A stretch of 64,000 nucleotides of DNA from contig CM074806.1 in NCBI GenBank assembly GCA_037447605.1, forward strand, positions 3,720,001-3,784,000, read 5' to 3'. The notes below the pieces were generated by a model. That model saw only the letters and a program-made list of their open reading frames with translations. It made no database searches and was not told the DNA's origin. A program made the translations under genes and the position numbers. Positions within the stretch are counted from its first letter, which is position 1; every line of letters starts with the position of its first letter. Positions 25,185 through 32,321 of the stretch are shown here, piece by piece. The DNA is from Zygnema circumcarinatum SAG 698-1b (lineage: Eukaryota; Plantae; Zygnematophyceae).

Positions 25185-27977
25185 ATGGCGGCCGCACGCG
25201 AGCTCGTCCGCGTGCCGCTGCATAACGGGGCGCTTCTTCTCTGCGCGCTCTTCTTCTCAGTCGCGCTCCGGGCAACTGCCGTGCACATATTGCCCGCGGA
25301 AGGTGAGATGAGCACCAACATGGAGGGGCTAAGAAATGGGAATACGATGTTCTTAGATATTCTTTAGTTACCATGCTATCAATTATGCTGGAGAAGGAAA
25401 GGGAGTCGATATGTGGTGGCCTTGGCTGCCAGAAGGGGGAGAGGGTAAGGGATGGGGGGGGAGGGGGAAAGAAGGGGAGCGGCTGTGGTAGAGAATGGCG
25501 GCAGAGAGGTTTGTGCCAACATGGAGGGAAAGAAAGTAGAAAAGTTGGTGGATTTATGGCGTGTGGAGGCTTCACATTCCTTACAGCGCATTCAAGAGGG
25601 CTCTGCAGAGAGCGCGCTGCTGGAGCTGAAGCAGAGGGCGCGGCCTCATCGCGAGTTGGAGTCGTGGGTGAAGGGAGGCGATTGCGAGGAGTGGGAGGGC
25701 GTGGAATGCGACGAGATGGGCCACGTGTTGGCAATGTATGGCTCTTCACCTGGTCCAGCTCTCGTCCGGATGCATTCTTGCGTCGATGGACAACACGGCT
25801 CGCAGGCTGTGCTTTCTCTCTCTCTCTCTCTCTCTCTCTCTCTCTCTCTCTCTCTCTCTCTCTCTCTCTCTCTCTCTCTCTCTCTCTCTCTCTCTCTCTC
25901 TCTCTCTCTCTCTCTCTCTCTCTCTCTCTCTCTCTCTCTCTCTCTCTCTCTCTCTCTCTCTCTCTCTCTCTCTCTCTCTCTCTCTCTCTCTCTCTCTCTC
26001 TCTCTCTCTCTCTCTCTCTCTCTCTCTCTCTCTCTCTCTCTCTCTCTCTCTCTCTCTCTCTCTCTCTCTCTCTCTCTCTCTCTCTCTCTCTCTCTCTCTC
26101 TCTCTCTCTCTCTCTCTCTCTCTCTCTCTCTCTCTCTCTCTCTCTCTCTCTCTCTCTCTCTCTCTCTCTCTCTCTCTCTCTCTCTCTCTCTCTCTCTCTC
26201 TCTCTCTCTCTCTCTCTCTCTCTCTCTCTCTCTCTCTCTCTCTCTCTCTCTCTCTCTCTCTCTCTCTCTCTCTCTCTCTCTCTCTCTCTCTCTCTCTCTC
26301 TCTCTCTCTCTCTCTCTCTCTCTCTCTCTCTCTCTCTCTCTCTCTCTCTCTCTCTCTCTCTCTCTCTCTCTCTCTCTCTCTCTCTCTCTCTCTCTCTCTC
26401 TCTCTCTCTCTCTCTCTCTCTCTCTCTCTCTCTCTCTCTCTCTCTCTCTCTCTCTCTCTCTCTCTCTCTCTCTCTCTCTCTCTCTCTCTCTCTCTCTCTC
26501 TCTCTCTCTCTCTCTCTCTCTCTCTCTCTCTCTCTCTCTCTCTCTCTCTCTCTATTCCTTTCTCCCTCGTTCTCTCTCCCCTCTCAAGCCACAATAAATG
26601 AAACCATAAGAATACTGACTCTTTCTTTCGAATTTTTTCTTTGACAGTGATGCACTGCCTGTGAAAGAACTTGATGCTGAGGTTCGAGACCGGCTGCCGT
26701 TCCTCGAAAGCGGGTACGCTCGCCCTCTGAGTTGATCCGACGAGCAATAGTTTACAGTTTCTCCTCTTTTCTTTTAATTTCCGGATATTTAGTTGCCCAC
26801 CACTTTACTTGCTTTACGCGGAGCAGACCTAACACCTCGTACCCATCCAACTCACTCTTTTCCTGTTTCCTGCGAATGTGCTCTCTGTGGCAGGTCGACT
26901 CTCCGACCTGTAGAGACGGACTTGCATTTATCCGCAGGGCTCACATGGAACCCCCGTAGAGCGTCCAGAAGAACGCTACACTCTGACCCGTCCCCTTCTT
27001 CTTCTTCTTCTTCTTCTTCTTCTTCTCTCCAAAGAGTCGCCCAGCTCATCGCCCCCGCCATGAAGAGCATGGCGGCGTGGGAGAAGAGCGCCAAGAACAC
27101 CAAGCTCGTCGGTGTCATGTCACGCCCGCGTATGCATGCGCATGCAAAGCGCGAGGTCCTCGTTCTCAACAGCAGCCAAGTGGCGGGGAAAGATGAGCTG
27201 ATCGACTGCTACAAGGGGCTGCCCGCCGCTAAAGTCGTAGAGGGGTTTGAGGATTCGGGAATGATCTCTGGGGTGGTCACAATACGGAGAAAGTACCTCG
27301 ACGGGTGGGTGCTGCTCTGCTCCGGAGCACTGCTCGCTCCCAACCTCGTGCTGACCGCCGGACATTGCGTCTACGATTTGGATTTTGGGGGCTGGATTGT
27401 GAATTCTCCAAGCGACATGGTGATTTATTCAAGGTACAATGGGCAGTTCGACTCGACTTACAGCTCTGCAACCTATTCAACCATAACTGTCTTCCAACAG
27501 TACCTCGACACTCCCACTTGGGAAGATACACTGAACACTGGTTGCGACCTTGCAGTGATAAAGCTGTCGAGAGCACTGAAAGGGCAGACCTACAGCTGGA
27601 CAGCCCCTGTTCAAGGGCCGCTCCCACGGACCAATGTCGGGTATCCGGGCATCACACAGGATGGCAGCACCATGATCTTCGATGTGAGTTCGGTGAAGCT
27701 CCGCCTTGGCTGCAACAAGTTGAATAAAGCGATCATGTGCGAAGACGTGTCCACGGAGGCGGGCATGAGCGGAGGGCCCATATTTAACGGGTATGAGAGC
27801 ACCACGCTTTTGGGGACATTGTCGGGCGGGTACATTGACGCGTGTCCTGCGCTTTACACGTCTCTCAATGGAAGCTATCCGCTCACGACATTGGTCACAC
27901 TCAGCGGGTGCAAGTATTCGAAGAAGAGGGCGAGGAAGGCGGACATGGGGGACAGTGTGTACAAAGCATCGTGTTGA
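25185..27977 (+). CDS. Secreted LRRNT-cap / trypsin-like serine protease fusion, paralog 1; exons 25185-25302, 25609-25735, 26648-26713, 26894-27977; 464 aa
   Basis: Hydrophobic signal peptide (LLLCALFFSVALRATA); LRRNT_2-like cap (SALLELK..LESWVKGGDCEEWEGVECDEMGHV); a 66-nt phase 2-2 exon; and a protease domain with LCSGALLAPNLVLTAGHC, CDLAVIKL, GYP and GMSGGP. GT-AG junctions total 1395 nt in frame. Confidence 0.8.
25815..26552 (+). repeat. Pure (TC)n microsatellite, ~369 units, inside intron 2 of protease paralog 1
   Basis: An uninterrupted TC run of 738 bp. Confidence 0.95.
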
Positions 27978-30264: not shown

Positions 30265-32321
30265 ATGGTGGGCGGGAGGACGTGGCGCTCTTTGGAGCTC
30301 TCCATTGCGCTGCTGCTCATCTCCACCTTGGGGGCGTCGCTCTCAGCGGAGGGGAAGCCGCTGCTGCCGGCGGAAGGTGAGAGGCCGCGGAAGCTATGGT
30401 AGCCATGGCCCAGCAACCAAAGACGTTTCTTTTAGTTTTTTCCTTTTTTATAAACCTTACTATACTCTCCTTCTCACGGCCCACATGAAGCCATGGCTGC
30501 CGGTTGCAGAGGAGGCGCTGCTTGCGGTGAGGGAGGAGGGGGGGGGGGCGGTCACGTGGCGGGGCGGGGCGGACTGCAGCCAATGGGAAGGCGTCACGTG
30601 CGCCGACTCGGGACACGTGGCAACCATGTAGGGCCCGTCACACACCCGACCGTATTCTGGAAACGTAAAGCTAGAACAATGAAGCTACGCCTCTATGGAC
30701 CTGCGGTTCAATTTCACCTCCTGAGGCATACGAACTCAAAGAAAAAAATCAAAATAAAACGCATTGCAGTCAGTATGGGGTTGAGAAACGCAACGAATTG
30801 AAAAACATTTTCGCAATGCTGTGTTCGCCTGCGCGAAGCATGTGACCGAAATTGTTGAAAAACTCGACTTGAAATTTGTGGAAAGAAGGGCAACCCAAGA
30901 AGAATTAATCAACCCAGCCACCTGTATTGTGCCTTTCGGCTTAGACCTTCATTACGAACTCCTTTATTCAAACCCTAAAGAAGTCAAATACTCACATAAG
31001 CCGAAGCTATGCTTGTCTTCCCCTGTATTGCAGAAACTTGCAAACTCTTCAACTTTCAGATAAAACGCTCCAGGAGTTGCGGAAGAAGCTGCCCTTTCTT
31101 GAAGCTGGGTAACTCCAAAAAACCAAACCTCCAAACTTTTAGAAAAACTTGAACTCTTTTTCTTGATCCCTGCACGCTCCAAGCCCCCGTTTCATTCTCT
31201 GATGGAGAAACCATTCTACGTTTCTAAGCAGGTCTCAAAAGACTCCATCCAAGCCGATCAATCTCTTAATTGATTCGTCAAAGCCCCCCGAAAAGGAACC
31301 TATCCTGCCGCGAAAATTGGGCTCTTCCCTCTCTTCAACAAGCACAAACTTTCGCGCTCATTCCCGAGTCCTCACTGCTTCCGCTCTCAATCTCAGCATT
31401 TGGGAGGAACGAAAAAGAGTGACGAACATTGTGGGGGTCATGTCGGTCCCCTCTCGCGGCTCGTTCTCCCCCTCTGCCTCCCTCATATCGAGAAGGTTCA
31501 AGCAGGCGAGCGCTAAGCCAACGTTAGGGCTTGCTCGCATAGTGGACCTATTCGACTGTAATGTGGGCTTTCCAGCATCTCAAGTTGTCCAAAGTTTCGA
31601 AGATTTTGGACTCGCTTCCGGTATCGTGGCTCTCCGAAAATGGGACTCCATTTCTATGGGATGGGTGCTGCTCTGCTCCGGCGCGCTATTGGCTCCGCAG
31701 CTTGTGCTCACAGCAGCACATTGTTTATATAATACTGATGCCAACAGTTGGTTAGTGAGTGAATCTGACCCCATTATGGTTTACTCCCGGTACAACGGCG
31801 CAACGGACACCGTTTACTCGACTTCGCTAGCCACTGATCCAATGCTGTTTACGGAATACCTGCGAAAATCGACATGGGAAGACTCACTATTTGACAGCTG
31901 TGATTTTGCAACTTTGAGATTGAAGGATAGCCTTCCCGGATCGACGTACAGTTGGACGGATCCTGCTCAAGGAGGGTCAGGAAGAATCAATTATGGGTAC
32001 CCTGCAGAGACCCAAGATGGCAACAGCCTAATCTTTGATCAGGGGGATGTGAAGCTCACGATGGGATGTGATGGCCTCAGCAGAAGCGTCTTTTGTGAGA
32101 AGGTCTCCATAGAAGGGGGGATGAGTGGAGGTCCTATGTTCAGCAATTATTACGATGGGCTCATCGTGGGGGTGGCCTCTGGTTCTACTTTAGATGGATG
32201 CCCAGCATACTATGGAGGGGTGACTGGAAAGTTCAAGCTGGCGACCCTTGTGAAGCGACACAAGTGTGAGGTGCTGGAGACCAAAACCAGCCTTGGGATT
32301 ATCAAGACTGCAAAATGTTAG
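30265..32321 (+). CDS. Secreted LRRNT-cap / trypsin-like serine protease fusion, paralog 2; exons 30265-30376, 30510-30627, 31034-31108, 31232-32321; 464 aa
   Basis: Signal peptide (SIALLLISTLGASLSA); LRRNT cap (EALLAVR..VTWRGGADCSQWEGVTCADSGHV); a 75-nt phase 2-2 exon ending LPFLEAG; and LCSGALLAPQLVLTAAHC, CDFATLRL, GYP and GMSGGP. Intron phases (1,2,2) are the same as in paralog 1. Confidence 0.8.

What the first reader, a model, noticed from the sequence alone, without database searches (positions are those of the whole stretch)
25185..32321. Tandem pair of secreted LRRNT-trypsin-protease fusion genes: a candidate undescribed extracellular proteolytic system
Seen in sequence: two 4-exon genes each splice to 464 aa, with signal peptide, LRRNT cap (ALL...W...DC..WEGV.C...GHV), one short exon, a low-complexity linker, and a trypsin-fold domain with intact His (TA[G/A]HC), Asp (CD[L/F]A) and Ser (GMSGGP). 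There is no transmembrane segment, kinase or PDZ domain. Established knowledge: LRRNT_2 caps normally open LRR-RLK/RLP/PGIP ectodomains, and familiar plant trypsin-fold proteases (Deg/HtrA, NAL1-like) lack this architecture. Inference: this is a lineage-specific secreted protease family built on a receptor N-terminus, possibly acting in wall or mucilage remodelling, defence, or peptide/pheromone processing. I know no described protein with this architecture but could not search.
Basis: partly seen in the sequence, partly recalled or inferred. Interest (0 to 1): 0.85.

Follow-up and report, generated by a model that had tools for sequence, protein, structure and literature searches.

The report
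Secreted LRR-cap–serine protease gene pair
Two neighbouring, expressed genes of a green alga (apparently a close algal relative of land plants) each encode a probably secreted chymotrypsin-fold serine protease that carries the N-terminal cap of a plant receptor's leucine-rich-repeat domain, a real but very rare domain combination whose function is still unknown.

Summary
Gene 2 (30265-32321) is a four-coding-exon gene of 464 aa. Single spliced RNA contigs from independent runs join all four exons with GT..AG introns. Gene 1 (25185-27977) has the same exon plan and intron phases by homology (468 aa in my model). Its large exon is present in the same RNA runs, but its junctions were not checked with reads.

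Pfam finds Trypsin/Trypsin_2 in both large exons. It finds LRRNT_2 above the curated cut-off in gene 1 exon 2; gene 2 is subthreshold. His265, Asp326 and Ser400 are intact in both genes. The only hydrophobic segment outside the protease core is an N-terminal signal-like one.

An exhaustive profile search of 1.84 billion representative proteins found about nine close relatives of the protease domain. Only one, a 431-aa transcript product from another sample, has the same cap-stub-linker-protease layout. Those three proteins form one clade. The cap is as conserved as the catalytic domain (41-49% against 36-44% identity); the linker is not (13-23%).

The fold is nearest to bacterial glutamyl endopeptidases and to elastases. 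There is no Asp189, so "trypsin" describes the fold, not the specificity.

I read it as a lineage-restricted secreted S1 pro-enzyme made by exon shuffling. This is a new variant of a known kind. There is no evidence for a "system", and the function is untested. The scan also noted this stretch once before (s1-337101).

The parts
25185..25302 (+). Gene 1 exon 1: start codon and signal-peptide-like segment; ends in phase 1 at an AAG|GTGAGA donor
   Evidence: Sequence; gene model; hydrophobic window at residues 10-38. The junction was not checked with reads.
25597..25735 (+). Gene 1 exon 2: plant-type LRR N-terminal cap (LRRNT_2). The acceptor is uncertain: 25597 or the in-phase alternative 25612.
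   Evidence: Pfam LRRNT_2 29.1 bits, E 1.2e-6, cut-off 20.7; Atlas neighbours are LRRNT_2 clusters at score 0.94.
25815..26578 (.). (TC)382 microsatellite inside intron 2 of gene 1
   Evidence: Tandem Repeats Finder.
26648..26713 (+). Gene 1 exon 3: short LRR-like stub ending in the conserved LPFLE-x-G motif
   Evidence: Gene model and alignment with gene 2 and P0002. No Pfam LRR hit.
26894..27977 (+). Gene 1 exon 4: Ser/Thr/Pro-rich linker (to about 27107), then the S1 protease domain and stop. His265 is at 27363-27365, Asp326 at 27546-27548, Ser400 at 27768-27770.
   Evidence: Pfam Trypsin E 4.8e-12 and Trypsin_2; catalytic codon coordinates; exon held at 0.99 of sampled words in RNA runs X1 and X2.
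30265..30376 (+). Gene 2 exon 1: start codon and signal-peptide-like segment
   Evidence: RNA contigs join 30376 to 30510 in X1 and X6; hydropathy.
30510..30627 (+). Gene 2 exon 2: diverged LRR N-terminal cap
   Evidence: RNA junctions; LRRNT_2 subthreshold at 12.8 bits; 41% identical to the gene 1 cap with 10 invariant motif positions.
31034..31108 (+). Gene 2 exon 3: one LRR-like unit ending in LPFLEAG
   Evidence: RNA junctions 30627|31034 and 31108|31232 in all four runs.
31232..32321 (+). Gene 2 exon 4: linker, S1 protease domain and stop. His265 is at 31719-31721, Asp326 at 31902-31904, Ser400 at 32124-32126.
   Evidence: RNA contigs; Pfam Trypsin E 7.3e-11 and Trypsin_2; catalytic codon coordinates.
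32594..32829 (+). Alternative 3' exon of gene 2. A splice from 32265 to 32594 (GT..AG), seen in run X2, replaces the last 18 residues, including two conserved Cys, with 14 others (460 aa).
   Evidence: Joint; sequence; translation.

Best explanation
The two genes are old tandem duplicates in the nuclear genome of a streptophyte alga. Each encodes a secreted pre-pro serine endopeptidase of about 465 aa.

Layout:
- Exon 1 supplies a signal peptide.
- Exon 2 supplies the disulfide-bonded N-terminal cap of a plant-type LRR ectodomain (LRRNT_2).
- Exon 3 supplies at most one LRR-like unit ending in a conserved LPFLE motif.
- One large intron-free exon supplies a poorly conserved Ser/Thr/Pro-rich linker (predicted disordered in the P0002 model) and a chymotrypsin-fold (clan PA, family S1) catalytic domain with an intact His265-Asp326-Ser400 triad, plus a short C-terminal Cys-bearing hairpin.

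Origin (inferred): exon shuffling placed the 5' exons of an LRR receptor-type gene in front of an intron-free protease gene. This happened once, before the duplication and before the split from the organism that yielded P0002.

Mechanism (inferred):
- The protein enters the secretory pathway.
- The roughly 170-190 residues between the signal peptide and the start of the catalytic fold act as a pro- or targeting region. The catalytic fold starts about three residues before the conserved Cys at gene 1 residue 213.
- The conserved cap docks the enzyme to a partner or keeps it latent until the linker is cut.
- Residue 194 is Met, not Asp. Activation therefore cannot use the chymotrypsinogen Ile16-Asp194 salt bridge and is more likely bacterial-style removal of the pro-region.
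- By motif alignment the S1 pocket is uncharged (Ser189, Gly/Ser216, Ala226), with neither Asp189 nor His213. This predicts cleavage after hydrophobic or small residues rather than after Lys/Arg or Glu.
For: Shown:
- One spliced transcript spans all four exons of gene 2.
- Gene 1 exon 4 is present in the same RNA runs.
- Gene 1 has the same phases, and the same column positions for exon boundaries 2/3 and 3/4.
- Pfam finds Trypsin, Trypsin_2 and LRRNT_2.
- The cap identity is supported.
- The triad and nine Cys are conserved between paralogs that are 42-44% identical.
- P0002, from a different sample, has the same layout and forms a clade with both window genes at 96/96 support.
- Identity is 41-49% in the cap, 36-44% in the protease and 13-23% in the linker, so the cap is under constraint.
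- The AlphaFold model of P0002 has pLDDT above 90 from residue 178 to the end. Residue 178/179 aligns to residue 1 of mature glutamyl endopeptidase and V8, and to residues 16-17 of chymotrypsin-type enzymes. Z is 26.2 for 1p3c, 24.5 for Esp and 23.7 for elastase.
- A profile match to elastase 1bru gives E 2.3e-13.
- Only an N-terminal hydrophobic segment lies outside the protease core.
- GC3 of the protease exons (0.54-0.67) is close to that of neighbouring host genes (0.47-0.58).

Inferred: secretion, the pro-region role, the activation mode and the P1 preference.
Against: - No signal-peptide predictor was run, and there are no proteomic or activity data.
- The gene 1 splice junctions are unverified.
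- The gene 2 and P0002 caps fail the Pfam cut-off.
- The cap module is modelled with low confidence (pLDDT 50-71; 67.7), and no docking onto the protease was predicted.
- A cap with a single LRR and no C-terminal cap is not known to fold on its own.
- The pocket residues come from motif alignment, not from a structure.
- A frequent 3' splice variant of gene 2 removes conserved C-terminal Cys, so not every transcript encodes the conserved protein.
Confidence: 0.7

Rival explanations
1. The cap and stub are a functionless relic. Exon shuffling only served to give a foreign or retroposed intron-free protease gene a promoter and a signal peptide, and the cap plays no part in the enzyme's function.
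For: Only a cap plus at most one LRR remains, and no Pfam LRR model matches exon 3. The cap is modelled with low confidence. Relatives without any cap, such as P0003 and P0004, still have a signal-like N-terminus and the same protease domain.
Against: The cap is as conserved as the catalytic domain (41-49% against 36-44%), while the adjacent linker has decayed to 13-23%. Ten motif positions, including both Cys, are invariant in three proteins. The LPF motif of exon 3 is also kept in all three (LPFLE in both window genes, LPFVQ in P0002).
Confidence: 0.17
2. The protease exon is a recent horizontal acquisition from bacteria (a V8/Mpr-type glutamyl endopeptidase) and keeps that specificity. This is the idea in the scan's other note on this stretch.
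For: The protease domain sits in one intron-free exon. The nearest structures are bacterial glutamyl endopeptidases. The only word-index hit is named V8-like Glu-specific endopeptidase. The family has a patchy distribution.
Against: The best matches in 185,579 bacterial and archaeal species genomes are only 24-30% identical in the long matches. No NCBIfam bacterial family matches. Codon-position GC is host-like. The paralogs are 42-44% identical and an equally diverged homologue (P0002) exists in another sample, so the gene is old in this lineage. The sequence profile prefers eukaryotic elastases. His213, used by Glu-specific enzymes, is absent by motif alignment. An ancient transfer cannot be excluded.
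Confidence: 0.1
3. The joined reading frame is an artefact. The cap exons and the protease exon would belong to separate genes joined only by read-through or by contig mis-assembly.
For: Contigs have no direction, and the tool warns that a contig across two genes does not prove one transcript. Gene 1's junctions are unverified.
Against: Three in-frame GT..AG junctions lie on one contig in two runs from different studies, with intron depth near zero. The same layout occurs in a 1479-nt transcript contig from another sample. Phases are conserved in both paralogs.
Confidence: 0.03

Closest known systems
Bacterial glutamyl endopeptidases of family S1 (Bacillus intermedius GluBI, PDB 1p3c; Staphylococcus V8 and Esp, PDB 1qy6 and 4jcn)
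   Same: Best structural matches to the modelled catalytic domain of the homologue P0002: Z 26.2, and 23.5-24.5, over about 207 residues. They are secreted, made with an N-terminal pro-region, and lack Asp194-type zymogen activation.
   Different: Only 16-19% identity, and no NCBIfam hit. His213 of Glu-specific enzymes is absent by motif alignment. The algal proteins have the C42-C58 and C168-C182 type cysteines, extra C-terminal Cys, and an LRR cap in the N-terminal region.
Chymotrypsin-like elastases and other S1A peptidases (e.g. PDB 1bru, 1hax)
   Same: Best sequence-profile match (E 2.3e-13). They share the TAAHC and GxSGGP motifs, Ser189, and nearly equal structural scores (Z 23.7). Animal S1A proteases often carry N-terminal recognition modules followed by a linker.
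   Different: Residue 194 is Met, so the Ile16-Asp194 activation switch is missing. Cys191 is absent. No animal-type modules (CLIP, CUB, kringle) are present. The host is a green alga.
Plant LRR receptor kinases, receptor-like proteins and PGIPs (LRRNT_2 cap, PF08263)
   Same: Gene 1 exon 2 passes the LRRNT_2 cut-off. The W-x-G-V-x-C ... G-H-V stretch aligns to FLS2 residues 38-52 and to the caps of TMK1/3, a receptor-like protein and a PGIP-like antifreeze protein. A signal peptide precedes the cap.
   Different: No LRR solenoid (one unit at most), no C-terminal cap, no transmembrane segment and no kinase. A protease follows instead.
Plant Deg/HtrA proteases (family S1, subfamily C)
   Same: Same clan and fold. 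They are the only S1 peptidases listed for Arabidopsis (16) and Populus (18) in PMC1780054.
   Different: Deg proteases have PDZ domains and are organellar. No PDZ domain was found here, and the closest structures and profiles are S1A/S1B, not HtrA.
Cap-less relatives of the same small S1 clade (P0003 from a Tribonema gayanum transcriptome; P0004-P0009 and P0017 from uncultured or unlabelled assemblies)
   Same: E 5e-45 to 7e-17 for P0003-P0009 and 1.3e-09 for P0017. They share the conserved region upstream of the CSG strand (L-x-D-C-x-x-G-x-P-A) and the triad, and several have a signal-like N-terminus.
   Different: They have no LRR cap or LPFLE stub, and they form separate clades from the window genes plus P0002.

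Membership tests
Peptidase family S1 (clan PA, chymotrypsin fold) | Match to the family profile above the curated threshold | tested here: met
   PF00089 scores 46.6 and 42.7 bits (cut-off 20.6). PF13365 scores 29.4 and 33.8 bits (cut-off 27.6).
Peptidase family S1 (clan PA, chymotrypsin fold) | Catalytic triad in the order His, Asp, Ser with TAxHC and GxSGGP contexts | tested here: met
   His265, Asp326 and Ser400 are present in both genes. They are invariant across 11 family members.
Peptidase family S1 (clan PA, chymotrypsin fold) | Double beta-barrel fold | tested here: met
   Shown for the homologue P0002 only: pLDDT above 90 over residues 178-431, and Z 22-26 to many S1 structures. For the window proteins it follows by 36% identity.
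Peptidase family S1 (clan PA, chymotrypsin fold) | Peptidase activity | not testable with these tools
   Needs recombinant enzyme compared with the Ser400Ala mutant.
Subfamily S1A (chymotrypsin/trypsin type) | Asp194 for the Ile16 salt-bridge zymogen switch, and Asp189 for trypsin-like specificity | tested here: not met
   The motif is G-M-S-G-G-P (Met at 194), and Ser sits six residues before the catalytic Ser.
Subfamily S1B (glutamyl endopeptidase I, V8 type) | Closest structural similarity and Glu-recognition residues | tested here: inconclusive
   Top structural hits are 1p3c, Esp and V8. But there is no NCBIfam match, the sequence profile prefers elastase, and position 213 is Leu, Ala or Cys by motif alignment.
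LRRNT_2 (PF08263) plant LRR N-terminal cap | Profile score above the gathering cut-off | tested here: met
   Gene 1 scores 29.1 bits against a cut-off of 20.7. Gene 2 scores 12.8 bits and P0002 gives no hit, so both fail on their own but are homologous to the gene 1 cap at 41-49% identity.
LRRNT_2 (PF08263) plant LRR N-terminal cap | Two conserved Cys around the W-x-G-V-x-C motif, placed after a signal peptide | tested here: met
   Invariant in all three proteins.
LRR receptor kinase / receptor-like protein / PGIP ectodomain | Solenoid of several LRRs after the cap | tested here: not met
   Exon 3 encodes 22-25 residues, at most one repeat. No Pfam LRR model matches.
LRR receptor kinase / receptor-like protein / PGIP ectodomain | Transmembrane segment and kinase (for receptor kinases) | tested here: not met
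   No hydrophobic window beyond the signal segment and a core strand. No Pkinase hit.
Deg/HtrA (S1C) | PDZ domain(s) after the protease domain | tested here: not met
   Pfam finds only Trypsin and Trypsin_2. The protein ends 68 (gene 1) or 64 (gene 2) residues after the catalytic Ser.

The most novel reading that the evidence does not exclude
The receptor-derived cap could turn these enzymes into ligand- or wall-docked extracellular zymogens. They would then belong to a lineage-specific set of receptor-ectodomain-protease fusions; other scan notes report LRR-EGF-papain-LysM mosaics in the same genome. [quoted passage not shown]
Probability: 0.1. Interest if true: 0.75.

Novelty: new variant of a known kind. 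Interest (0 to 1): 0.45.

Why it matters
Land-plant S1 peptidases are, as far as catalogued, Deg/HtrA enzymes (PMC1780054). A secreted elastase/V8-like S1 protease in a streptophyte alga is therefore unusual. Here it is also joined to the cap of the LRR ectodomain that later dominates plant cell-surface receptors.

The case is clean. It is supported by RNA, conserved in two organisms and duplicated. It shows exon shuffling that reuses a receptor N-terminus. It also yields a small protein that could be expressed to ask what an isolated LRR cap does. The value is mainly for the evolution of domain architectures and for algal extracellular biology. It does not settle a long-standing question.

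Tried and rejected
- Word-index homology searches were nearly blind here. With gene 1 exon 4 they gave one weak hit. With the family alignment they gave four hits.
- IMG/VR viral contigs held no relative.
- One genome scan failed because no conserved stretch was found. It was repeated with a narrower alignment.
- NCBIfam gave no hit.
- The AlphaFold DB cluster search gave only generic serine proteases with TM below 0.5.
- Modelling the 45-residue cap alone gave pLDDT 67.7, too low for a fold search.
- I could not name the organism of the window or of sample SRR8128906. "Zygnematophyte" comes from an earlier unverified note. It is only consistent with the GRAS and DNA-PKcs genes nearby.
- Six literature searches found nothing on an LRRNT-S1 fusion. 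The Zygnema genome preprint and those of its supplement tables held as text do not list it.
- The full-length spliced window proteins could not be handed to the structure tool by reference, so P0002 stood in for them.
- I considered Deg/HtrA, receptor-like protein or kinase, and pseudoenzyme readings. I rejected them on domain content and the intact triad.

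
Full report
**What is there**

The window is eukaryotic nuclear DNA with about 50% GC. Between 25185 and 32321 lie two same-strand genes. Each ends in a large open exon: the open reading frames found are 26793-27977 and 31317-32321. 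Pfam assigns both to Trypsin (E 4.8e-12 and 7.3e-11) and to Trypsin_2, above the curated cut-offs. It scores 26.5 bits in the long open frame and 29.1 bits (E 1.2e-6, cut-off 20.7) for the exon alone. A tblastn search of the window with both proteins finds no further copy.

**Gene structure**

Four runs from three studies behaved as RNA, with exon depth of 100-300 and intron depth of 0-30. In X1 and X6 a single contig (1434 and 1376 nt) joins 30376|30510, 30627|31034 and 31108|31232, all GT..AG. X2 and X3 show the last two junctions.

Gene 1 modelled by analogy has exons 25185-25302, 25597-25735, 26648-26713 and 26894-27977. It has GT..AG introns and the same phases (1, 2, 2), and it encodes 468 aa. 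Exon boundaries 2/3 and 3/4 fall on identical alignment columns in both genes. The exon 2 acceptor could instead be the in-phase site at 25612, which would give 463 aa. The better-looking acceptor at 25587 is out of frame with the conserved cap. Gene 1's junctions are therefore predicted, not shown. Its large exon is held at 0.99 of sampled words in X1 and X2, the runs that carry spliced gene 2 contigs, so gene 1 is transcribed.

**The protein**

- Both products begin with a basic stretch followed by a hydrophobic stretch and a small-residue cleavage-like site.
- The only other 19-residue hydrophobic window is the buried GWVLLCSGALLAP strand of the protease. I therefore infer a signal peptide and no membrane anchor. 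No dedicated predictor was available.
- After a conserved [I/L]-[L/V]-P-[A/E]-E-E comes the cap. Ten positions are invariant in gene 1, gene 2 and P0002: W, G, D-C, W, G, C and G-H-V.
- A language-model search puts the gene 1 cap next to LRRNT_2 clusters (score 0.94, 174 shared features).
- A profile of the three caps gives weak but position-correct matches to a PGIP-like antifreeze protein (residues 46-69), FLS2 (38-52), TMK1/3 and a receptor-like protein (E 0.08-0.9).
- Exon 3 encodes 22-25 residues that read like one LRR and end in LPFLE-x-G. No Pfam LRR model matches it.
- A 66-71-residue linker follows, 35-38% Ser/Thr/Pro. Then comes the catalytic domain with His265, Asp326 and Ser400 in both genes. 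Exon 4 contains nine Cys.

**Relatives**

- The two genes are 42-44% identical, so the duplication is old.
- An exhaustive HMMER search of 1.84 billion representative proteins with their profile found 346 proteins at E up to 0.001, but only four at E up to 1e-30 and twelve at E up to 1e-10.
- The best hit is P0002 (E 5.6e-57, 431 aa), encoded by a 1479-nt transcript contig from sample SRR8128906. It has the same order of parts: signal-like start, cap, an S-R-K-L-P-F-V stub, linker and protease.
- The next hits lack the cap. P0003 comes from a Tribonema gayanum transcriptome. P0004-P0009 and P0017 come from unlabelled assemblies.
- In a maximum-likelihood tree, gene 1, gene 2 and P0002 form one clade (96/96). 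The eleven-member family is set apart from more distant S1 proteins (96/96). One fusion event is the simplest reading.
- Identity by region is 41-49% in the cap, 36-44% in the protease and 13-23% in the linker. The cap is kept as carefully as the enzyme, which argues that it has a function.

**Fold and subfamily**

The AlphaFold model of P0002 (36-row alignment) is confident from residue 178 to the end (pLDDT about 87-98). It is weak in the cap (50-71) and in the linker (below 50).

VIA-align ranks Bacillus intermedius glutamyl endopeptidase first (Z 26.2). Esp and V8 follow (Z 23.5-24.5), then elastases (Z 23.7). The many other S1A enzymes listed score Z 22.4-23.4. Foldseek and the sequence profile put elastases first. 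NCBIfam has no match. The domain is therefore a divergent S1 member lying between the S1A and S1B types.

The aligned range begins at P0002 residue 178/179. That corresponds to residue 1 of the mature bacterial enzymes and residues 16-17 of chymotrypsin numbering. Everything upstream is thus an N-terminal extension. By motif alignment, residue 194 is Met, residue 189 is Ser, residue 216 is Gly or Ser, residue 226 is Ala, and residue 213 is not His. From this I infer three things, none of them shown:
- there is no chymotrypsinogen-type activation switch;
- the specificity is neither trypsin-like nor Glu-specific;
- the P1 pocket is uncharged.

**Origin**

The protease part is intron-free and the cap part is split into small exons, which fits exon shuffling. 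A recent bacterial transfer is not supported:
- the best matches in one genome from each of 185,579 prokaryotic species are 24-30% identical in the long matches;
- no viral contig encodes a relative;
- GC3 of the protease exons (0.67 and 0.54) is close to the range for the neighbouring PLD, PI3K-like and DNA-PKcs exons (0.47-0.58).

An ancient transfer, or vertical descent with many losses, cannot be told apart without taxon labels.

**Context**

Flanking genes are ordinary host genes: a C2-PLD gene (3.5-6.4 kb), a GRAS gene (about 34.6-35.6 kb, minus strand) and a DNA-PKcs gene (about 40.8-51.4 kb, minus strand). Nothing links them to the proteases. An earlier follow-up note of this scan calls the genome zygnematophyte-like. 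It also reports a receptor-ectodomain copy spliced onto a papain-type protease gene elsewhere. I did not test that. It suggests that receptor-module-protease fusions recur in this genome.

**Known or new**

Six full-text searches found no description of an LRRNT-S1 fusion. The Zygnema genome preprint counts 209 zygnematophyte-specific Pfam combinations but does not mention this one, either in its text or in the supplement tables held as text. In Arabidopsis and Populus, family S1 is listed as Deg proteases only (PMC1780054). I rate this a new variant of a known kind: a family S1 secreted protease with a novel, conserved, receptor-derived N-terminal module.

**Limits**

- No function is shown.
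- "System" is not justified.
- The databases may under-sample streptophyte algae. The window's own proteins were not among the hits, so rarity is a lower-confidence claim.

**Verdict**

The mechanism (a secreted pro-enzyme whose cap serves docking or latency) is an inference, at about 0.7 for the overall statement and lower for the role of the cap. Interest is moderate.

Noticed in passing
window 32265-32594: Gene 2 has an alternative 3' splice (GT..AG, skipping 328 nt), seen as a contig joint in run X2. It swaps the last 18 residues, including two Cys conserved in gene 1 and P0002, for 14 other residues (460 aa). In X1, X3 and X6 the main contigs stop at 32212-32259, just before this donor, and separate contigs cover 32373-33000. 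Both forms therefore probably exist.
   Followed up: partly
window 25815-26578: A nearly perfect (TC)382 microsatellite (98% matches) fills most of intron 2 of gene 1. It creates long spurious open frames on both strands.
   Followed up: no
window 28839-29067 and 29518-29972: Two GC-rich minisatellites (10/55-bp and about 61-bp units) lie between the two genes. They account for the repetitive 'MPCHA' and 'AAGSSGQQR' open frames there. No gene was evident.
   Followed up: no
window 32953-33000: RNA contigs from several runs match 32953-33000 with 1-2 differences and carry differing unmatched sequence upstream of 32953-32956. It looks like a short repeated element or a shared exon boundary downstream of gene 2.
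   Followed up: no
window 3510-6415 (+), 33342-35607 (-), 40867-51378 (-): The neighbouring genes are a C2 plus PLDc phospholipase D, a GRAS-domain gene, and a large DNA-PKcs gene (CC1-2, CC3, CC5 and PI3_PI4_kinase pieces). GRAS together with DNA-PKcs fits a streptophyte alga rather than a flowering plant.
   Followed up: partly
L002 (ENA ERZ27257064 k141_73189, 42.6 kb) and L003 (Logan SRR27067770, 9.6 kb, 35% GC): Two cap-less relatives of the protease (P0006, P0007) sit on contigs densely packed with intron-free genes that have no Pfam hits. Next to them are an RNA_pol_Rpb1_5 fragment and a DEAD/SNF2-type helicase. The source could be a giant virus or an unusual protist. IMG/VR held no relative.
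   Followed up: partly
window 16001-18000: There is a strong local GC skew (+0.28) around a 379-aa open frame (16074-17213) that has no Pfam match.
   Followed up: no
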